This document shows, piece after piece, positions 741 through 27,200 of a stretch of DNA of 64,000 nucleotides; the stretch's first letter is position 1, and each line of letters begins with the position of its first letter. A model generated the notes under the pieces. It had not been told where the DNA came from, searched no databases, and saw nothing but the letters and a program-made list of their open reading frames with translations. This stretch comes from Laetmonice hystrix. Taxonomy: Eukaryota. The DNA lies in contig OZ249448.1 of assembly GCA_965235115.1 (NCBI GenBank), positions 17,422,001-17,486,000 of the forward strand. Direction: 5' to 3'. The position numbers were made by a program, and so were the translations under genes.

Positions 741-2400
741 CTGTCAATAACCTCGCTTCGACCCACTGCCGCCATCTATAGGTCTGTTAGGCGTGCTTGG
801 AGATCACATCTCCCGCTCCCCCACCGTTCTGTTGATTCATCCGTGTAGACCTAGCCTACCTGTTATTTACATATAATTATTGGCCATAAACCATCTGTCC
901 CTCATTTTACATATTTATTTAAAGCGTTTTGCTTCTTTTTCTTTGTTTATTCCCCCCCCCCCCCCCCAGATTGCACCACAACAGTATGAGGGATTTATTT
1001 CCACGGAAATATGATCTTGAAGGCATTCAAGGGGAAATTTTATATCTAATGAATTAAACTCCAGAAGATAATTATGCAGATAAGCCACAACCCCCCCCCC
1101 CCCCCCCCTCCAATTTTAACATAAGAGGCCAAACATCGTTCCTACTGGATTACCTTACACACACACCCCTTCCGGTCCAGGTTAAGAGTTAGATCTCACA
1201 TATTAACTCAAGGAGATTCCATAACACATGTCATGAAATATTCACCAAAAAATCATTCCTTCCCCAGGTTCAGCGAATCCCTGTTATGTAAATATGACAA
1301 AAGCACATACTGGCCGCGGGAAGGCGCTCATGATAAGTCAGAAAAAAATGTCCGAATACACAGAAGGATGTTCTGAATCCACAGAGGGACAAAGATGGAC
1401 TTCGATTGTCTGTGATAAATGCACGTGTACCAACAGCAATGTAAACGGAGACATCTGACATGCCTTCCACAATATCACACATAATATAGTGATGAATTGC
1501 GGCGACTTTGTCGTCGGTAAATTACCCAAGGGAATTGACGCAATAGGCCTGACATGATGCTTACGCATACATAGGGCGCAATCCAGCATTATTAACGTTA
1601 TTTATTTGTATAGGTTGGTTATACAAAGCCGCGATTTTGACGTTATTGAAAAGCGGTCGTATGGGCCAGTTTAGGAAAACCAGTTATTTTAAATCGTACT
1701 TTTCATCCTCAAAATCCACTTAAACTAGACAGTGTAGCCATAGGCCCTACATCTTATGAATACCGAAATAATTCTTCCTCAATATACATTACTTTGGATA
1801 TGTATACCTATTAAATAAAGGTTTAATAAAACATATTTTACTTGTATGGCTACTTGATAGGAGAAAGGCGATAGGCTTATCTTATCTGTAAGCCCGGTAT
1901 CTTCAGGGTCTATATATTTCTGGTTTTAGCTGGCTAGTGTTGGCCTCACAAGCAAAAAAAGATTCTTTCGATTATATACAGGGTGTTTCCAAAGGTTCGA
2001 CTGGATCGAAATTCCCGTTTACATTAATTCAATATCTTCCATCTTTTCCAAACTGCTCTTTGGGGGGGGGGGGGCTACTGGCCACGATTTTTGAAAGGAC
2101 ATTGGCTGAATCTCTAACCCCGATAGAAGTGTACTTTGGTAACAGTCTAATTCCCCCACATGGGCTTAGCCTGGTCCCCAGCTCTATATTGACTACGTAT
2201 ATTGCCTGGTGAAGGCTAATCGAAGCGAGCATTGTGATTGGCCCATCGAAAACATGGACGCAAACGGGTACGGGTAGTTCCGTACCCTCCGTATTTCTCC
2301 AACAAGATACATTTTCGTCAATCCCTTTAAAATACAAGTGTTAAATGTCCTCGCTTTTCTGGATGTAAACATAGCGTCATCGGTCCCCACACCTGCGGTC

Positions 2401-2520
2401 TGCATACGCATGAGCATGATGGCCACTCCCGGCCACGCCCAAAGCAGAAGTCGGTCACTCTGTTAAACCAACGGAACGGAAGCGGAAGTGTTTGGAGTTT
2501 AATTACTTCCATTTCGCGGC
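2401..2520. promoter_or_regulatory. Housekeeping-type promoter motif cluster with no assigned gene
   Basis: NRF1-like tgcatacgcatgagcatg (2401), GC box ggccacgccc (2431), tandem ETS cggaagcggaagtg (2477), E2F-like tttcgcggc (2512). Confidence 0.4.
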
Positions 2521-2808
2521 TTTTGGTCAGCCAGCACCTGGCCTAACATAGCGGATGCGTCTGGTAGGCAGAGGGGACCAGGCTATAATTCCCTAACACC
2601 GACATTGAAAGAATGTGTTGAGAACGTCCATGATTGCATAAGGAAATATTACTTTACTTTATAATCTTAAAATATAATTCCACAGGCCTCATTTTCAGCA
2701 GCAATTATAAGTATCTCTCCTTTAAAGTCCGACTCCTGTTTTGAAAAAGTTTATGTTCTTGGAAGCATTTCCAGGTCGCAGATCCCCTGAATAGCCGTTG
2801 CCCATCAG

Positions 2809-3816
2809 TTACTTTTGCGTATACACGTGGTTTGCGAGGAAGTCGGCGATGCCCTTGCCGATTTCATGCGGAGAGTCTTCCTGTATAAAGTGAAGACCTT
2901 TTACTGTAATTGTTTTCTGATTAGGCCAGTCGGCAACCTGACGCTGAATGATCGGGCTAAAGAACCCAGGCTCAGCATCGACGAACAGCTTCGGTATGGA
3001 GTGCGTTTCTTTCAGCCATGAATAGTACGTCTCTACGATGTCGACCATGTCTTCTGGCCCGGCCGTTTTGACCGGTATGGCCCGGGGCCAGGTGAGTGTT
3101 GGCCGCCGAGACTCGCCCTCCATCCGATACGGTAGACGGTATTCCTCCATCTCCAGCTCTGACAACTCCCGGAATATGGAGCGCGGGAAAAGTACCTCAA
3201 CAAAGAAATTATTCTTCAGAACCATTTCTTCTCCTTTGGGAGTTCTAAGGGTTTGAAAGACACGACGCGCGATTTTAGGCCAGTCATCCCAGGAGGGAAT
3301 GGGGGCGACGAAGGTTTCCATGTAGACGATAGCCTCTACCCTTTCCCTGTTCTCGTAACACCAGTTGAAGCCTAACGCCGAGCCCCAATCATGGCCAACG
3401 ATCGTCACCTTTTCTGGCAGCTGGACCGTTTGAAACCACTCTTTCAGGTAGCGATAGTGATTTGTGAACGAGTAGTCATTATTGGCGAGTTTTGATGAGT
3501 GACCCATGCCGACTAGATCCGGGGCCAGGCAGCGCGCCTGGCCGACCACGTGAGGCATAATGTTCCTCCACAGGTAGGCAGATGTAGGGTTCCCGTGAAG
3601 GAAAATGACCGCCTTGTCCGCCGCCTTGTCGCCAGTGTCCAGGTAACTCATCCGGGCATCGAGAACCTCCACAGACGTGCGCGTGTTGAGGACGGCGTTG
3701 GCGGCACTGGAGCAGGGCGCAGACCGTACCCCTCCCCAGCAGGAGACGCCCACCAGATCACTGACCTTCACATGCCCTCCTAACAGACGACAAGACGCTC
3801 GGAGCACGGCCATCAT
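2809..3816 (-). CDS. Haloalkane dehalogenase / Renilla luciferase-like alpha/beta hydrolase (HLD-II type), single coding exon, 335 aa from the first ATG
   Basis: Motifs FLHGNPTSAYLWR, APDLVGMGHS, VGHDWGSALG (nucleophile Asp plus halide-binding Trp), YMET (acid Glu), RRPTLTWPR and KGLHFIQEDSP (base His). Asn-Asp and Asp-Glu spacings (67 and 24) equal RLuc N53/D120/E144. The ORF-track start at 3885 is GTG; the first ATG is at 3816. Confidence 0.93.
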   Translation of the reverse strand: MMAVLRASCRLLGGHVKVSDLVGVSCWGGVRSAPCSSAANAVLNTRTSVEVLDARMSYLDTGDKAADKAVIFLHGNPTSAYLWRNIMPHVVGQARCLAPDLVGMGHSSKLANNDYSFTNHYRYLKEWFQTVQLPEKVTIVGHDWGSALGFNWCYENRERVEAIVYMETFVAPIPSWDDWPKIARRVFQTLRTPKGEEMVLKNNFFVEVLFPRSIFRELSELEMEEYRLPYRMEGESRRPTLTWPRAIPVKTAGPEDMVDIVETYYSWLKETHSIPKLFVDAEPGFFSPIIQRQVADWPNQKTITVKGLHFIQEDSPHEIGKGIADFLANHVYTQK

Positions 3817-4287
3817 GTTCTCAACCTCAAAACCAAGCGATACTGAAGTGAACGTCCGCAGAAGGACGCCTTTTGCACTTTGCACCTCCTTTACCGGTCG
3901 ACTGATAGGCGCGACAGCCTACAAACTAAGTCGAGGCCTACAAGTACATGTCTTAACCAAGCTCTATAGGTAACATATCGTTTCGATAAAGACCTACTTG
4001 GGTAGCAGCTCCTTCTAGACACATATATACGCACCCCCCCCCCCCCCCCGTCCGCCCCAGATATAGGCCTCGGCCTTTTTTGATACTGAATTGCATGGTC
4101 CCGTTTATAATATGGGCGAGAATGGGTCTCAATTAACAATTATTAGTAATTGTTGAATCTATCCTACGGTTTATTGAAGGCCGCTATATAGGCCACTATT
4201 TTCATGGTAACGCCTCCCATTTTCTCACGTTTCTTTAAATCAGTGCAGGAATATTAACTCAGATTAATCATTGAACTTCCTATACAT

Positions 4288-9159: not shown

Positions 9160-9292
9160 TTATACAAAGGCCTCGATGGCGTGGTAGAGCTGCATAAGCA
9201 CCATGAAGTGGGCGGGCAGGCACGACCGACGGTCGTTGGTTGTCGGGTCCACCGTCAACCAGGAGAGGGCGTTGTAGTTCTCCAGCACGTAC
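9160..9292 (-). CDS. MED13: MED13 terminal coding exon 28
   Basis: [43 protein letters not shown], stop TAA. Confidence 0.96.
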
Positions 9293-12200
9293 CTAGAAAT
9301 GAAACAAACAGCAACGGTTGAAATGGCACCAAGGTAAAGGGGATAAACAAAACAATCTGCAAACTAAAAGAAAGATATATAAATATGATTTGAATAGAGT
9401 TTGATTCTTCTTTTTTTTAAAGGAAATGACTTTCCTGGTTACATACATAGCCAAACCTTAAGTAGTCAAACATACCTGAGGACATCACAAGTGAACATTG
9501 AGTCAAGTGGGTGCGAGTTTCGACTATGTCGTGAATGTGTGAACTCATCTTGATTTTGCTGTACCGTCGGGCAGTGGATGTGTAGGGCCGCCTGTCAGGA
9601 AATAAACAATAAATTTAGTTTGTCTTTCTTCATTTTCAGCATTTCTCGGTACTACATGTACTCACAATTATAAGACACTGCTACCGCTGTTGAACATGGA
9701 CGAATTGCAACATATATTTCCTACCCAGTTATTGGGTGATTTTCTCAACAACTTACCTTGAAGCAAGTTGGGCACACATTCTCCCTATGTGGGCATGCTG
9801 CCCAGAACCAGCGGGGCAGAGGGCCAGTTGGTGAGGTGGACACATAGAAGCCCATGGCCAGAGGTTGCTGCAGCAGGTTGGGTGGGTCATCCTGCGGGTC
9901 AGAGATCTGGTTGGCTGAACCCAATTTGTTCTGGTTTTGTGTCGGTGAGTTGCGGCCACCTACTCCAGCCAAGGGGGAACCCGGGGCAGAGTTGTTCTTC
10001 GGCGATCCTGGGGAACCGACTGGACAGGTCAGGCCAAGAAGGTCGTTCAGCTCAGGCATCTCGTCCTCCGGAAATCCTTTGAAGAAGTCATCATCGAGGG
10101 CCATGCCAGCATCCAAATCGTTCTCCTGATGGTTTGGTGTTGTGTTTGGCTACAGAACAAAATGTGAAAGTTATGGATGATGTCATTATTTGATACAGAT
10201 TACATAGTGACTATAATACATTTATAGATGATAATTGAAAGAAACGAGCCTGCCAACAAGAACTAACCTGTGCCGTGGCTGAGGTGGGAAACACGAGAAT
10301 GTGTGTACAGGACGCGTCCCGTGGGGTGGACAGTGGCACGCTTGAGCTCATCTTCTCCTCCACCTTGATGGAGTCGGTCATGATATGGATGGACTGGTGC
10401 ACTTCCATGGACACAAGGCAGGCAGACATGATGCACGGCATCTCGCTCATACTCAGGAGGCCACACTGGTTACACATGTCTCGTAACTGTTGCGACGCTA
10501 ACCGCAGGTTCTTGCTGCTTAACAAACCTGCCCATCCTGCCACAAAACAAAAAAGGTTACATTACACTTTTTAAAAAAACATTTTTAGATGGGAAATCAC
10601 TTTTAAGAAGTACATAGAAATTCTTATCAAATCATGTTCCAGAAGATATGCATTCTTCCATTTCATCATGCTAAAAATGAAAGCATGCCAAAGCCAACAT
10701 ATCCTATAGGACAAGATAAATTATTACTGGCTGATTGAAAGTTTGTTGTTTCATTCCTAGCCGACTTGCTCATTAACACTTTTTGTTCACTTACCGGTGA
10801 GTTCGCCATGGCCCATGCGGCCAAACCTGCCAACGACCAACCTCCAAGGATGTACAGTCATACTCATCACGCCTAACACAAAGTCCCACAGTTTTCTTAA
10901 TCCAATCTTTCTGGCTGACGCTTTCTTCCGTCTATTTCTATTTGGGATCTCAATGTTGATGGTGCACGTTTCCATCAGTTCTCCACGGTCGTCGGTGACG
11001 ACAGCAAGTAACCACCTTTGATCCTCTGAGAGACAGTAGGCACAGAACATCACTCCGGCCCGCTCGGCACTTTCACCCCACATCTCCACCAGCTGCAGCT
11101 GTCGCTCTCGTTGTGGTGCCAGTACAAATGGTGGCGAAAATAGAGGACCCGTCAGCATCCTCCCAACCTAGAACAGGATCGTAAATATTAGCGCATCTTG
11201 TTTAATTATAAATGGTTTTAGAAATTAGCATCCTGTTTATCATGCAATTATAAACTTAAAACAAGAACATCATACAGAATGTCTCAGTGCCTTTACTGGG
11301 ATCTTTTCAATTCTTACCGTGTTGTCCTTAGATTTAATGATGGTATCAGCAGCGGCTGCAGGACCAAAGCCCGTTAAGGACCGTCCTAACAAAGATGGCA
11401 CTAGGTGGCGGCGGCACTGTGTGTAGACCGACATAGAAAGCTGCTTGAGGTAGGATGAGGTGGACGTCTCCCGGAAGTCCAGTATTGATTGTAATGGTAC
11501 TAACTGAAAATAGAATAAAATGGTCTAAGTGTGTGCAATCAAACAAAGATATACAATTTTTAATCCTTAACAACGAGTCAAATCAGATACAGGTTTTTCT
11601 CAATATTATCAAATTATGCGACAAATAATGAAAGAAAATGCTGACTGAGCATGTGTAACATGGATCTTACTTGAAGATGGACGTTATTGTGCATGTGTTC
11701 TGGCAGGTTATTGAGCATCTCGCGGTAGCAGCGGAGGAGACCAAGCATGGCCATACGGCGGAGGTGGTCCCAGTCAGCGGCGTACGTGAAAGGGTCTACC
11801 ATGTAGATGATGATTGATGGCCCGTCAGAGCTGTCCTGCTCCAGCTCTGCCTCCTGCCCTTCCTTCTGGGGTGGGGCCTCGTTTTCACCTGTCATACACA
11901 AACATTTAAGAAAGATCTTACTGGTTTCTTCATGACATAAGAGCCCTTGTGGAACTGTATTGCTTCTACCTGATCTGTGAAAATACTTCATAAACTAAAC
12001 AAAAAAAGGCAAGTTTTTCAGACATTTCACACAGCATCAAGATTTGGTAACGGCAAGTTCAAATCTCCTAAGTTATAGGTCTAAGATTAGAAATAGTATC
12101 GACGTCCAATCATGCACTTAGCAGAGAAAATCGTAGCAACCACCACTGAAGTGTATCATTTTCAGGCCAAAGTGACCGCTTTTTCTTACATTACATTTTA

Positions 12201-24200: not shown

Positions 24201-27200
24201 ATTCAATAAAACGGATCCTCCAAGCTTTTCAATCACGTGCTTGAGCAACAACGATACTAAATGTTAACTATTCCTGTAATCTGTACCTCATAGCAGCAAC
24301 TCCCAACACAATTGTTAGAAGAGCCACACAGTAACACAGGCAATCAATTAACACTACGAGTGCTTTCCTAATTCTTAATATTAAATTACAAACATGCCAT
24401 TTAAAAAGGCAAGGAGGCCGCGTGGCAGAAAATAAAGCACCGCTGGCATCAGCCGTCGCTGGAAGCTGGCAGACGAGTCCGCCTCATCCATTTCAATCCG
24501 CGTGCTTCTTTTGGAGCGAGGGGATTTAGCCTCAAATAGGAAGCTCCGCGCGCGTGGTGAACACCACGAGAAAAACGTGCCACCATTTTACTCTGCCACA
24601 AGTAGCCACATTGGCTGAAATTATCAATGCCGCACCAAAAGAAACACAAACATTGCACTGTTGTACTGAACTCATCGATCAGACTTAACATGACTGAAAA
24701 ACATATACACACATTTCTGAATCTATTTAGGCGAAAAGGCGGCTTGGACCTCTAGCAGCAGGTCGGTGTATGTGTCAATAGTCGGAGGCCAGAGGCGTCA
24801 ATATCTGGAGGCGAGCAGCTGGATGGGCGATTTTTATTCTGCTCACTTTGTCAGCCCTATCAATCAACAGACTTGACCTTCTTTAGGGCCCACACCGTCC
24901 TCTACGATGCTGCAAATGTTTATTCCTCATAGCTTACATATAGATGCAGAATTATTAACCGTTTCAAACATGTCATTGACTGCAACTGTTTCCTGCAGCA
25001 CCTAGAAGTCGGCTGCGCATTAATCTCACACCACTGGGAGTCTCCTATCTTATTTACATCTGTCTCAAAACGAATGAAATACGACCGCATACACGGAAAT
25101 TCAATCTATGATCTGGGAGCGATTTTCACAACTATGGGATGGCAGTTGGCTGGTGTGGTTATCAGGGACTGCTGTAGGGGCTAATCGAGCTGACGATATT
25201 GTGGGAGGAGTAGCTCTAAGGTTGGTGTGTGCTGCAGCCAGCCGGGGCTATCATCACTGGGCAAGGTTAATTACACCTGACCAGATCACCTGTGGGAGAG
25301 CCGCCGTGGAGGGTGGGATGGGATTGAAGGTCAAACCATGGACAGCTGCCGTCTGTCTCCAGACAGTAGTTAACCCCCGTCACCACCCGGACACGGCCAC
25401 ACATCCATGGCCCCCAGACCGGGCCATAGAACATCCATGGCCCCCAGACCGGGCCATAGAACATCCATGGCCCCTAGACACAGTCACAGATCCATGGCCC
25501 CCAGACCGGGCCATAGAACATCCATGGCCCCCAGACCGGGCCATAGAACATCCATGGCCCCCAGACCAGGCCATAGAACATCCATGGCCCCTAGACACAG
25601 TCACAGATCCATGGCCCCTAGAGATCCATGGCCCCCAGACCGGGCCATAGAACATCCATGGCCCCTAGACACAGCCACACATCCATGGCCCCTAGAGATC
25701 CATGGCCCCTAGACACAGCCACAGATCCATGGCCCCGGACAGGGCCATAGAACATCCATGGCCCCTAGACACAGCCACAGATCCATGGCCCCGGACAGGG
25801 CCATAGAACATCCATGGCCCCTAGACACAGCCACAGATCCATGGCCCCGGACAGGGCCATAGAACATCCATGGCCCCTAGACACAGCCACAGATCCATGG
25901 CCCCTAGAGATCCATGGCCCCCAGACAGGGCCATAGAATCCATGGCCCATGGGCCATCCATGGCCCCTAGACACAGCCACAGATCCATGGCTCCTAGACC
26001 GGGCCATAGAACATCCATGGCCCCTAGACACAGCCAGAGATCCATGGCCCCTAGAGATCCATGGGCCCTTGACACGGCCCTAGAAGAGCCATGGCCCCTA
26101 GACACAGCCAGAGATCCATGGCCCCCAGACACGGCCACATAACTATGGCCCCCAACACAGCCACACATCCATGGCCCCCAGACGGGGCCAGCAGATGCAT
26201 GGCCCCCAGACAAGGCCATAGAAAACTGCTACCAAGGAGCAAATCAACAGATCTCATAGAGTATTTAAAATCTTTGCGTTTTCAACATTTCAGAGATATA
26301 CCCTCTCCCCCCCCCCCCCCATCTCCTCTCTCCTATGCTGAAGTACAAGAAGAAATTTTCCACGCTAAAGCTTGGTTAAGAATTACCTCCTGTGACGCAC
26401 AACCTCTATGCATCCAGTATACCTCAGACAATATGTTTTACAAGATTACATATCGTTCATTTGGAGTTTGTGACTTTTCCCATTAAATGTCAATACTCGT
26501 TTCAGCCTGCAGTAAATGAAGCTCGCCGAAACCCTGCTGAACATTACCTCTGGAAATTGGAAATCTTTCCCCATCTCCTCTGGAGCACCAAACCTTGTCG
26601 CATCTTGGTAATTCAATTTCTCATGGTCACCAAAGAACCTATCATCTGCTGATTACTATGAATCCTACTCTAAAATACTATTGCTATAGGGGTCCCGAGT
26701 AATACCAAACCAGCGCTCTGCCAAATTCCAGTTTTATAACATAAAGAGACCATTATTACCCGGAACATTTGATCCTGTTCATAGATAACAATTCCATTGT
26801 TCACATTCCGTTACATTTAAGGAGATACAGTATGTCGTTCTGGCCGTACGACTACCAGTGTATGTGGAGCCAACATAATGATTTACTTGTAGTAATTCAT
26901 TATTCACTCCAGCCTACACTGACCAGAACCTTCTCAATCTTATTCTGAATGCATTGCTTAGTTCAGACGAACCAATCTTTCCGCCGTTTTAATTAAAATC
27001 CACTAGAAATTTTGAAAAAAGATAGAATCCAGCAGAGTATGGAATCCTTACTAATGTTTGAAACCAAGAATGTTTCACAAGGATAAACGTATGATGAGCA
27101 TCGATAATGGCATAGACCTTGGAGCTCATTAGTTCTTGTCACCATGTCTCTAGGTTGAATTCAAATGAAGTAGAAAAGAACAATCCAGCTGCCAGCTGTA

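What the first reader, a model, noticed from the sequence alone, without database searches (positions are those of the whole stretch)
2809..3816. Intronless Renilla-luciferase-like haloalkane dehalogenase with an intact catalytic pentad in an animal genome
Seen: a complete single-exon CDS next to intron-rich genes, with N(GNPT), D-W(HDWG), E(YMET) and H(LHFIQED) intact at RLuc/LinB spacing, and cap-region text (PSWDDWP, GEEMVLKNNFFVE, GESRRPTLTWPR) close to RLuc. Established: RLuc is homologous to bacterial HLD-II dehalogenases; echinoderm homologs include an active dehalogenase (DspA, sea urchin) and a luciferase candidate (brittle star); Pro versus Ala after the halide-binding Asn (RLuc A54) is linked to dehalogenase versus luciferase activity. 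This copy has Pro. Inference: a dehalogenase or bifunctional enzyme of ancient bacterial origin, possibly detoxifying marine organohalogens; the lack of introns may mean ancestral structure or a retrocopy.
Basis: partly seen in the sequence, partly recalled or inferred. Interest (0 to 1): 0.7.

Follow-up and report, generated by a model that had tools for sequence, protein, structure and literature searches.

The report
Annelid dehalogenase gene with decayed peroxisome tag
This is a real, intact, single-copy worm (annelid) gene for a haloalkane-dehalogenase / Renilla-luciferase-type enzyme, an already known animal gene family; the new point is that its extra N-terminal tail descends from a peroxisome-import signal shared by the animal members but decayed in this copy.

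Summary
Confirmed. Window 2809-3816 (minus strand) is one uninterrupted 335-codon gene for a subfamily-II haloalkane dehalogenase (HLD-II) / Renilla-luciferase-type hydrolase. All five catalytic residues are present (N76, D143, W144, E167, H309).

It is a host gene, not a contaminant. It is single-copy on a chromosome-scale contig, 5.3 kb downstream of MED13, with a host dispersed repeat about 220 bp past its stop. Read depth equals the flanks, and 7 of 9 coding SNP positions are silent.

The host is an annelid, by mitochondrial gene order and HSP70 hits. Annelid RLuc-like genes are already published (Capitella, Hermodice, Polycirrus).

An intronless CDS is common in this family, so this is not a retrocopy. 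Residues linked to luciferase activity are mostly dehalogenase-type (P77, Y165, F169, R185, F187). I predict a dehalogenase with at most trace light emission.

New observation: animal members carry an N-terminal extension that bacterial HLDs lack. In 18 of 49 it holds a classical PTS2 peroxisomal signal (shuffles: mean 0.7, max 6). The window's copy is degenerate (SCRLLGGHV). No paper in the held library links PTS2 with this family. No RNA data were available.

The parts
2809..3816 (-). Complete single-exon CDS of the HLD-II / Renilla-luciferase-type enzyme: 335 codons plus a TAA stop at 2809-2811
   Evidence: ORF; family assignment; only copy in the genome
3709..3816 (-). N-terminal extension, residues 1-36, absent from bacterial HLDs. 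It is basic, with one acidic residue. AF2 predicts a helix at 3-13 followed by a low-confidence linker.
   Evidence: alignment with animal and bacterial homologues; pLDDT below 50 for residues 1-29
3769..3795 (-). Residues 8-16 (SCRLLGGHV). This is the degenerate counterpart of the PTS2 nonapeptide R-[LVI]-x5-[HQ]-[LAF] found in this alignment column in other animal homologues. The first dipeptide is lost, the central Leu and His are kept, and position 9 is Val.
   Evidence: consensus from PMC4585086 and PMC3573110
3712..3723 (-). SAPC motif (residues 32-35) at the end of the linker, shared with the nearest relative P0001. It may be a presequence-processing site; this is inference from recalled thiolase data only.
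   Evidence: resemblance to the thiolase site is from memory and was not tested
2812..3708 (-). Alpha/beta-hydrolase core plus helical cap, residues 37-335
   Evidence: pLDDT mostly above 90; TM 0.96 to 6g75
3586..3591 (-). Codons for halide-binding Asn76 and the following Pro77 (RLuc has Ala54 at the latter position)
3385..3390 (-). Codons for nucleophile Asp143 and halide-binding Trp144
3316..3318 (-). Codon for catalytic acid Glu167, in the HLD-II position
2890..2892 (-). Codon for catalytic base His309. It carries a silent C/T polymorphism in the reads.
3082..3315 (-). Cap region, approximately residues 168-245. It holds the specificity markers F169-V170, W179, R185, F187, L190 and F205.
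   Evidence: alignment to AncFT; marker list
2653..2663 (-). TATAAA and AGTAAA hexamers about 145-150 nt after the stop. These are the only nearby poly(A)-signal-like sites, there is no canonical AATAAA, and they are unverified.
2204..2586 (.). Copy of a dispersed host repeat of about 385 bp, lying about 220 bp downstream of the stop codon
   Evidence: 1744 first-look candidates; 39 of the 40 other scored copies 90-92% identical, on many chromosomes; read depth up to 3e5
9160..9363 (-). Last coding exon and stop of MED13, on the same strand. The dehalogenase ATG lies 5.3 kb downstream of it.
   Evidence: MED13 identity rests on recalled similarity to human MED13 and was not tested by a search.

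Best explanation
A vertically inherited, selectively maintained nuclear gene of an annelid. It encodes an HLD-II alpha/beta-hydrolase of the animal 'RLuc-like' clade.

Most likely mechanism (inferred, not assayed): it works as a haloalkane dehalogenase. Asp143 attacks the carbon-halogen bond, Asn76 and Trp144 hold the leaving halide, and His309 with Glu167 activate water to hydrolyse the alkyl-enzyme. Pro77 is the residue type that permits this last step. Coelenterazine oxidation, if any, should be a trace side activity.

The 36-residue N-terminal extension descends from a PTS2 peroxisomal import presequence that the animal clade gained after acquiring the gene from bacteria. In this lineage the first PTS2 dipeptide is lost.

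The protein's compartment is therefore open. My rough odds are cytosol 40%, mitochondria 30%, peroxisome 30%.
For: Family and fold:
-.
- Pentad intact and spaced as in RLuc and AncHLD-RLuc.

Host gene:
- Single copy on G000 contig C18, with no assembly gap in the window.
- Short-read contigs from three runs of one study carry the whole CDS with both flanks. Depth is 46-50, against 28-68 in unique flanks.
- A host dispersed repeat lies about 220 bp past the stop.
- MED13 is on the same strand.

Selection:
- Of 9 SNP positions in the CDS, 7 are silent. One gives T251A in a loop. Two fall in codon 26 of the extension.

Vertical descent:
- The best homologue, P0001 (73% identity), comes from the same ENA assembly as the best HSP70 hit (88% identity).
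- The animal clade has 100/100 support, and the gene's 10-member clade 100/96.

Dehalogenase-type residues:
- P77, Y165 (RLuc H142), T168 (S145), F169-V170 (V146-V147), R185 (D162) and bulky F187 retained.
- Animal relatives with the same pentad are proven dehalogenases: DspA and DafA.

Extension:
- It is absent from bacterial homologues and present in most animal ones. Its composition is 4% acidic, 12% basic and 20% Ser/Thr.
- A classical PTS2 occurs in 18 of 49 animal N-termini. Shuffles give a mean of 0.7 and a maximum of 6 in 5000. The strict Petriv consensus occurs in 7 of 50, against a shuffle mean of 0.05.
- The motif falls in one alignment column in tunicates, amphioxus, hemichordates, echinoderms, octocorals and the window's own clade.
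- A helix followed by an unstructured linker is predicted, as described for PTS2 cargo.
- The host's ACAA1-like thiolase starts with RARVIFGHL, so the PTS2 route is probably still in use.
Against: - No RNA run holds the stretch, so expression, transcript ends and a possible 5'-UTR intron are unknown.
- An intact pentad does not guarantee activity on standard substrates. Among the brittle-star paralogues tested, only DafA dehalogenated 1,2-dibromoethane.
- The window protein keeps some residues said to mark luciferase-active enzymes: W179, F205 and the F285-F286 dyad.
- Its own nonapeptide fails the PTS2 consensus at positions 1, 2 and 9. The peroxisomal reading therefore applies to the family, not clearly to this copy.
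- PEX7 itself was not looked for.
- Codon usage correlates only weakly with two host genes (r 0.25-0.37, against 0.68 between those two). GC3 is higher, at 0.65 against 0.55-0.60. With 335 codons this is inconclusive.
- The role of Pro versus Ala54 is recalled from Chaloupkova et al. 2019 and could not be checked in the held library.
Confidence: 0.6

Rival explanations
1. The enzyme keeps the HLD fold and pentad, but its physiological substrate is not a haloalkane. It could be another hydrolase, or a cofactor-free oxygenase acting on an endogenous peroxisomal or mitochondrial metabolite. Dehalogenation would then be only an in-vitro side activity.
For: - Several brittle-star paralogues with the family fold showed neither clear dehalogenase nor strong luciferase activity.
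- Family-wide organelle targeting suggests a metabolic role rather than a xenobiotic one.
- No natural substrate is known for any animal member, and the papers read give none.
Against: - All five residues needed for the two-step dehalogenase chemistry are conserved under purifying selection.
- DspA and DafA do dehalogenate.
Confidence: 0.2
2. It is a coelenterazine-using luciferase or a truly bifunctional enzyme, as in Renilla or the brittle star AfLuc.
For: - The cap text is close to RLuc.
- W179 (RLuc W156), F205 (F181) and the F285-F286 dyad are as in luciferase-active enzymes.
- The closest solved structure is the bifunctional ancestor AncHLD-RLuc.
- Some annelids are luminous and express an RLuc-like gene.
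Against: - R185 replaces D162, the residue that deprotonates coelenterazine.
- Y165, T168 and F169 replace H142, S145 and V146.
- The bulky F187 is retained, and this is linked to low luciferase efficiency.
- P77 replaces A54.
- The ancestor's own luciferase activity is about 7000-fold below RLuc8.
- Polycirrus luminescence was found to be coelenterazine-independent.
Confidence: 0.07
3. An independent, more recent bacterium-to-annelid transfer rather than descent from the single ancestral animal gene.
For: - The CDS is intronless.
- GC3 is somewhat above that of host genes, CpG is not depleted, and the RSCU correlation with host genes is weak.
- Published trees have suggested multiple transfers into eukaryotes.
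Against: - The gene nests inside the animal clade (100/100), not among bacteria.
- It shares the animal-specific N-terminal extension, aligned column for column.
- Its closest homologue is in the nearest relative's genome by an independent marker.
Confidence: 0.05
4. A retrocopy or decaying pseudogene.
For: - The CDS is a single exon beside an intron-rich gene.
- There is no expression evidence.
- The PTS2 is degenerate.
Against: - The genome holds no other copy, intron-containing or not.
- There is no A-run or canonical poly(A) remnant after the stop.
- The frame is open over 335 codons, and 7 of 9 SNP positions are silent.
- Intronless CDSs are also found in Ptychodera, Anneissia and nine unnamed relatives.
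Confidence: 0.03
5. Bacterial contamination or misassembly.
For: The family is mainly bacterial, and local GC (0.54) is above the window mean (0.43).
Against: - Read depth equals that of the unique host flanks in three runs.
- Single contigs span the CDS plus 250-400 bp of host flank on each side.
- A host repeat with more than 1700 candidate copies lies about 220 bp away.
- The protein groups with animals and carries a eukaryotic-type presequence.
Confidence: 0.02

Closest known systems
AncHLD-RLuc, the reconstructed common ancestor of HLDs and Renilla luciferase (PDB 6G75)
   Same: It is the best sequence and structure match: E=3e-123, 281 residues aligned without a gap, 59% identity, TM 0.96. 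It shares the pentad, N-P-T after the Gly, the extra Phe in helix alpha4 and the FF dyad.
   Different: It is a synthetic protein without an N-terminal extension. It has Asp where the window has Arg185 (the RLuc D162 position) and His where the window has Tyr165. Its dehalogenase plus weak luciferase activity is measured; the window's activity is not.
Animal haloalkane dehalogenases DspA (Strongylocentrotus purpuratus) and DafA (Amphiura filiformis)
   Same: They belong to the same animal clade of HLD-II and have the same pentad. Their dehalogenase activity is demonstrated, and DafA has only trace luciferase activity. Echinoderm paralogues carry the same kind of N-terminal extension, often with a PTS2.
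   Different: They lie in the ambulacrarian subclade, whereas the window gene is in a separate 10-member clade. Identity to echinoderm members is 47-59%. I could not tell which hit ids correspond to DspA and DafA.
Renilla reniformis luciferase (RLuc / RLuc8, e.g. PDB 2PSD)
   Same: It has the same fold (TM 0.90-0.94), about 45% identity, the same pentad spacing, and similar cap motifs such as SWD-x-WP, NNFFVE and RRPTL-x-WPR.
   Different: RLuc has A54, H142, S145, V146-V147 and D162. The window has P77, Y165, T168, F169-V170 and R185. RLuc has only about 25 residues before the aligned core, against 48 here, so it has no room for a PTS2 plus linker.
Bacterial HLD-II enzymes LinB, DmbA (Rv2579) and DhaA
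   Same: They share the pentad type (Asp-His-Glu plus Asn-Trp). Identity is 47-48% to LinB and Rv2579, with TM 0.91-0.92. DhaA matches by sequence (E about 1e-74). The NCBIfam equivalog is matched.
   Different: They have no N-terminal extension. The cap differs: bacterial enzymes have Ala-Leu or Val-Leu where the window has Phe-Phe. They fall in the bacterial clade of the tree.
Published annelid RLuc-like genes (Capitella teleta ELT94308, Hermodice carunculata, Polycirrus sp.)
   Same: Same phylum and same family, so the presence of this family in annelids is already on record.
   Different: Those sequences did not appear among my listed hits, so their relation to the window's clade was not tested. 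None of the papers read mentions the N-terminal extension or its targeting motif.
PTS2 cargo proteins such as peroxisomal 3-ketoacyl-CoA thiolase (ACAA1)
   Same: The N-terminus has the same layout: a short amphipathic helix carrying the nonapeptide, then an unstructured linker, then the folded core. Many family members fit [RK]-[LVI]-x5-[HQ]-[LAF]. The host's own ACAA1-like gene begins with RARVIFGHL.
   Different: The window copy reads SCRLLGGHV and lacks the Arg-Leu dipeptide. Its nearest relative reads RRTLLKAHF. Import has not been tested for any member.

Membership tests
Haloalkane dehalogenase subfamily II (HLD-II) | Alpha/beta-hydrolase core with a helical cap domain | tested here: met
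   Pfam Abhydrolase_1 at 2e-27. AF2 pLDDT 89, with TM 0.91-0.96 to LinB and AncHLD-RLuc.
Haloalkane dehalogenase subfamily II (HLD-II) | Catalytic triad Asp-His-Glu, with the acid after strand beta6 | tested here: met
   D143, H309 and E167 align with the triad of 6g75, RLuc and LinB. They are invariant in 25 animal homologues.
Haloalkane dehalogenase subfamily II (HLD-II) | Halide-stabilising pair Asn-Trp | tested here: met
   N76 and W144.
Haloalkane dehalogenase subfamily II (HLD-II) | Score above the curated cut-off of the family model | tested here: met
   NCBIfam NF002938 equivalog scores 360 bits against a cut-off of 241. The HLD-I and HLD-III type models score below their cut-offs.
Haloalkane dehalogenase subfamily II (HLD-II) | Hydrolytic release of halide from haloalkanes | not testable with these tools
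   This needs a recombinant enzyme assay.
Animal 'RLuc-like' clade of HLD-II | Groups with animal sequences to the exclusion of bacterial HLDs | tested here: met
   The animal clade has support 100* (quick tree) and 100/100 (careful tree).
Animal 'RLuc-like' clade of HLD-II | N-terminal extension absent from bacterial homologues | tested here: met
   There are 36 residues before the core. Across 49 animal sequences the median is 41, and the bacterial sequences listed have 0-1.
Renilla-type (coelenterazine) luciferase | Asp at RLuc position 162, which deprotonates the luciferin | tested here: not met
   Arg185 aligns with D162 (alignment to AncFT; role of D162).
Renilla-type (coelenterazine) luciferase | His142, Ser145 and the Val146-Val147 dyad | tested here: not met
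   The window has Tyr165, Thr168 and Phe169-Val170.
Renilla-type (coelenterazine) luciferase | Ala rather than Pro after the halide-binding Asn (RLuc A54) | tested here: not met
   The window has Pro77. The functional meaning of A54P is recalled from Chaloupkova et al. 2019 and was not found in the held library.
Renilla-type (coelenterazine) luciferase | Phe-Phe dyad (RLuc F261-F262), Phe181, and Trp or Phe at position 156 | tested here: met
   F285-F286, F205 and W179. These are also present in the bifunctional ancestors.
Renilla-type (coelenterazine) luciferase | Light emission with coelenterazine | not testable with these tools
   This needs an assay.
PTS2-targeted peroxisomal matrix protein | N-proximal nonapeptide [RK]-[LVI]-x5-[HQ]-[LAF] | tested here: not met
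   The window reads SCRLLGGHV and fails positions 1, 2 and 9. In the family the motif is met in 18 of 49 sequences, against a shuffle mean of 0.7 and a maximum of 6.
PTS2-targeted peroxisomal matrix protein | Helical signal followed by an unstructured linker before the folded core | tested here: met
   AF2 predicts a helix at 3-13 and no regular structure at 21-36 apart from a short turn at 18-20, with pLDDT below 50 for residues 1-29. The core starts at residue 37. This architecture is described in PMC4585086.
PTS2-targeted peroxisomal matrix protein | Host has the PEX7 import route | tested here: inconclusive
   PEX7 was not searched, because no specific profile was available. The first exon of the host's ACAA1-like thiolase begins MDRARVIFGHL, which is a PTS2 except for Ala at position 2.
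Processed retrocopy | An intron-bearing parent gene elsewhere, and a poly(A) remnant | tested here: not met
   There is only one match in the 627-Mb genome. There is no A-run of 5 or more within 700 nt after the stop.

The most novel reading that the evidence does not exclude
The whole animal HLD-II / Renilla-luciferase-type family is ancestrally a PTS2 cargo. After the transfer from bacteria, the gene gained an N-terminal PEX7-dependent presequence, and the enzymes work inside peroxisomes. The signal was later lost or decayed in some lineages. Renilla luciferase has no room for it. This annelid and its nearest relative have broken motifs, which may have re-routed the enzyme to mitochondria or the cytosol. 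This would add a new family to the very small PTS2 cargo set (fewer than 30 cargo proteins). It would also place the raw material of two independent luciferase origins in the same oxidative organelle that houses firefly luciferase.
Probability: 0.5. Interest if true: 0.65.

Novelty: new member of a known kind. Interest (0 to 1): 0.45.

Why it matters
As a gene it is ordinary: one more animal member of a family whose sparse distribution, bacterial origin and dehalogenase-to-luciferase transitions are already under study, including in annelids.

It does supply three things:
- A clean chromosome-level annelid locus showing host integration and purifying selection.
- Evidence that an intronless CDS is widespread in the family.
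- A testable cell-biological hypothesis. Nobody knows what animal haloalkane dehalogenases do in vivo. A conserved PTS2 would say where to look (the peroxisome). It would explain the N-terminal extensions in animal gene models. It would also give a natural series of intact, weakened and lost signals, this window being a weakened one, for studying how targeting signals decay or switch.

Tried and rejected
- Expression. The run search found only three runs from one study, none on record as RNA. Laid on the window, they behave as whole-genome DNA with even depth across intergenic sequence. Nothing can be said about transcription.
- Earlier notes of the scan. These returned only this same finding.
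- Rfam on the window. No match.
- ESM Atlas with a MED13 exon and with the enzyme. Neither was informative for taxonomy.
- Names for the nearest homologues. Cluster look-up gave none for the window's clade.
- DNA of the nearest relative's contigs.
- Host ACAA1 search. Thiolase hits on C11, C30 and C6 looked like other thiolases by recalled motifs and had no PTS2. The C12 gene was the ACAA1-like one.
- Codon usage and GC3 as a test of foreignness. Inconclusive for a 335-codon gene.
- The A54P claim. It could not be verified in the held library.
- Retrocopy, contamination and independent recent transfer. Considered and rejected on the evidence listed under rival explanations.
- P0268. It was first taken for an animal sequence, but it groups with bacteria and was dropped from the counts.
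Full report
**The object.** On the minus strand, window 3816 to 2809 holds one open frame of 335 codons plus a stop. There is no assembly gap anywhere in the window.
- The product matches Pfam Abhydrolase_1 (2e-27).
- It scores 360 bits on the NCBIfam haloalkane-dehalogenase equivalog NF002938, whose cut-off is 241. The models for the other HLD types score below their cut-offs.
- Against solved structures the best match is the reconstructed ancestor AncHLD-RLuc (6g75): E=3e-123, 281 residues aligned with no gap. Renilla luciferase follows at about 1e-93 and LinB at about 1e-83.
- An AlphaFold2 model built on 25 animal homologues has mean pLDDT 89 and pTM 0.88.
- That model superposes on 6g75 at TM 0.96, on RLuc8 at 0.90-0.94 and on LinB at 0.91.
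- The five catalytic residues are N76, D143, W144, E167 and H309.

**It belongs to the host.**
- The genome has 627 Mb in 35 contigs and holds exactly one match, on contig C18.
- Contigs from three public runs of one study cover the whole 5.8 kb I laid. Depth over the gene is 46-50, and over unique flanks it is 28-68.
- Single contigs carry the full CDS plus 250-400 bp on each side. The even cover of intergenic DNA shows these are DNA runs, not RNA.
- About 220 bp beyond the stop lies a dispersed repeat of about 385 bp. The genome search gave 1744 first-look candidates for it. Of the 40 other copies scored, 39 are 90-92% identical, and they lie on many chromosomes.
- MED13's last coding exon ends near 9160 on the same strand, 5.3 kb upstream of the ATG.
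- The runs differ from the assembly at nine positions inside the CDS. Seven are third-position silent changes. One gives T251A in a surface loop. Two fall in codon 26 of the N-terminal extension.

This is the pattern of a gene under purifying selection.

**Which animal.**
- The mitochondrial contig (C35, 16,826 bp) has all genes on one strand.
- Its order is cox1-N-cox2-D-atp8-Y-cox3-Q-nad6-cob-W-atp6-R-H-nad5-F-E-P-T-nad4L-nad4-C-G-M-rrnS-V-rrnL-L, then S-nad1-I-K-nad3-S-nad2. COX1 was identified by Pfam. The other genes were assigned by size, position and recalled N-terminal motifs.
- From my knowledge of Lumbricus and other worms, this is the dominant order of Pleistoannelida. A systematic study confirms that one order dominates annelids and that trnG, the only displaced gene here, is among the genes most often rearranged (PMC10405356).
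- A large HSP70 exon finds its best named relatives among Lophotrochozoa at 77-79% identity: Alvinella, Owenia, a lineid nemertean, bivalves and Lingula.

The host is therefore an annelid, not a deuterostome.

**Place in the family.**
- In a careful maximum-likelihood tree of 49 animal and 31 bacterial sequences, the animal sequences form one clade with 100/100 support.
- The window groups with P0001 (100/100) inside a 10-member clade (100/96). All its members are unnamed ENA, Logan or JGI sequences.
- That clade is sister (97/83) to a clade of octocorals, amphioxus, hemichordates and echinoderms. Tunicates branch outside (a quick tree agreed).
- P0001 is 73% identical. It comes from the same ENA assembly as the best HSP70 hit, which is 88% identical and has the same two-exon structure. 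The nearest homologue thus sits in the nearest available relative, as expected for vertical descent.

The literature already lists this family in annelids: Capitella, Hermodice and a Polycirrus transcript. It also proposes one ancient transfer from bacteria followed by losses.

**Introns.** The CDS is also a single exon in Ptychodera flava (two copies 3 kb apart) and in Anneissia japonica. Nine unnamed relatives were called as whole ORFs by prokaryote-style gene finders. The Branchiostoma belcheri gene does span 2.7 kb. The genome has no second copy that could be a parent. No A-run follows the stop. The intronless state is therefore inherited, and the gene is not a retrocopy.

**Dehalogenase or luciferase.** A recent structural comparison lists residues that separate luciferase-active enzymes from plain HLDs (bioRxiv 10.1101/2025.09.13.676034). 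I read the window through its alignment to AncFT, which carries the RLuc cap segment.
- Dehalogenase-type residues: Tyr165 for RLuc His142, Thr168 for Ser145, and Phe169-Val170 for the Val146-Val147 dyad.
- Arg185 stands for Asp162, the residue reported to deprotonate coelenterazine.
- The bulky Phe187 is retained, and this is linked to poor luciferase efficiency.
- Pro77 follows the halide-binding Asn, where RLuc has Ala54. From memory, the A54P change gave RLuc hydrolase activity (Chaloupkova et al. 2019). I could not verify this in the held library.
- Shared with luciferase-active enzymes: Trp179, Phe205 and the Phe285-Phe286 dyad.
- Sea-urchin DspA and brittle-star DafA, from the same animal clade, are proven dehalogenases. 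DafA emits light four to five orders of magnitude below AfLuc and RLuc.
- The bifunctional ancestor itself is about 7000-fold weaker than RLuc8.

My reading is a dehalogenase with at most trace luminescence. There is a caveat: other brittle-star paralogues with the same fold were inactive on 1,2-dibromoethane, so the true substrate may be something else.

**The N-terminal extension.**
- Bacterial homologues begin about 35 residues before the HGNP motif. The window protein has 36 further residues, and 49 animal homologues have a median of 41.
- The extensions are poor in acidic residues (4%, against 13% in the cores) and rich in Ser/Thr.
- In the multiple alignment they share one conserved column block. 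It reads as the peroxisomal targeting signal type 2, whose consensus is [RK]-[LVI]-x5-[HQ]-[LAF]. The extended form is R-[LVIQ]-x-x-[LVIH]-[LSGA]-x-[HQ]-[LA] (PMC3573110; PMC4585086).
- Examples: RLHILGGHL, RLLAVGSHL and RLALLQRHL in the window's own clade; RVSILRSHL (Ptychodera); RVTVLASHF (Saccoglossus); RVSVMFGHL (amphioxus); RLLCLTGHL (Clavelina); RLNVLTSHL (sea cucumber); RLHTIANQL (Asterias); RLQTLSKHL (Amphiura); and RILTLAKHL in a sequence that groups with the octocoral Dendronephthya.
- The classical pattern occurs in 18 of 49 animal N-termini. Shuffled N-termini give a mean of 0.7 and a maximum of 6 in 5000 trials. The pattern occurs twice in 14,238 residues of the cores.
- The strict pattern occurs in 7 of 50, against a shuffle mean of 0.05.
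- The sequences are related, so these counts measure conservation, not independent events. The flanking residues have diverged freely while the two dipeptides and their spacing persist across phyla.
- The AF2 model puts a helix at residues 3-13, then a low-confidence linker up to residue 36. This is the architecture described for PTS2 cargo.
- No paper in the held library contains both 'PTS2' and 'haloalkane dehalogenase'. The two that contain 'peroxisomal targeting signal' concern tools. The two main evolutionary papers never mention peroxisomes, targeting or the N-terminus.

**This copy's signal is broken.**
- The window reads SCRLLGGHV. It keeps the central Leu, the Gly and the His, but it has Ser-Cys in place of Arg-Leu and Val at position 9.
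- Its nearest relative reads RRTLLKAHF.
- The host's ACAA1-like thiolase begins MDRARVIFGHL, so the PTS2 route is probably in use in this worm. PEX7 itself was not searched.
- A PTS2-destroying point mutation in rat thiolase is reported to create a mitochondrial signal (Osumi et al. 1992, cited in PMC4585086).
- The window's first 19 residues carry three basic and no acidic residues.

The compartment of this particular protein is therefore open. My rough odds are cytosol 40%, mitochondria 30% and peroxisome 30%; these are inference only. The SAPC motif at residues 32-35, shared with P0001, recalls the Cys-containing processing site of thiolase. That point rests on memory alone.

**Verdict.** Its interpretation is right in outline: dehalogenase-type, ancient bacterial origin, and ancestral lack of introns. 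It needs three corrections: the host is an annelid, bifunctionality is unlikely, and there is no conserved MED13 synteny in the three other loci read. As a gene it is a new member of a known kind. The finding worth follow-up is the family-wide PTS2-type presequence, with this window as a decayed example.

Noticed in passing
window 2204-2586: A dispersed repeat of about 385 bp. The genome search gave 1744 first-look candidates. Of the 40 other copies scored, 39 are 90-92% identical and one is 80%, and they lie on many chromosomes. Read depth here reaches about 3e5. Short-read contigs break at its edges. Its class (SINE or MITE) was not determined.
   Followed up: partly
window 25108-26486: A GC-rich stretch (0.57) inside a MED13 intron. 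It has tandemly repeated open frames on both strands, with a repeated '[10 protein letters not shown]' unit on the plus strand and '[13 protein letters not shown]' on the minus strand. It is probably a minisatellite.
   Followed up: no
window 4027-4050: A poly-C tract about 210 nt upstream of the ATG, next to a TATATA stretch. Short-read contigs of two runs end near here. It could lie in the promoter region, but there are no transcript data.
   Followed up: no
G000:C35 (L013 1-2100): The mitochondrial control region holds about four tandem copies of a 512-bp unit. trnG sits between trnC and trnM instead of between trnY and cox3. ARAGORN found 21 tRNAs; trnA and the second trnL were not found.
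   Followed up: partly
L018 about 3582-3860 (G000:C12:10291580-10291860): First exon of the host's ACAA1-like peroxisomal thiolase. Its N-terminus is MDRARVIFGHL, a PTS2 with Ala at position 2, followed by a Pro/Ala/Ser-rich linker.
   Followed up: partly
L002 10001-15245 (Ptychodera flava CM083790.1): Two intronless RLuc-like genes (351 and 354 aa) in opposite orientation, 3.1 kb apart, next to a PRP38-family gene. There is no MED13 nearby.
   Followed up: no
L006-L008 (G000 C13, C3, C7): Three HSP70 genes share a two-exon structure: about 108 aa and then about 540 aa. The nearest relative's assembly shows the same split.
   Followed up: no
P0247 (588 aa, ENA): The top profile hit is nearly twice the normal length and has a bacterial-style N-terminus. 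It may be a fusion or a tandem of two HLD domains.
   Followed up: no
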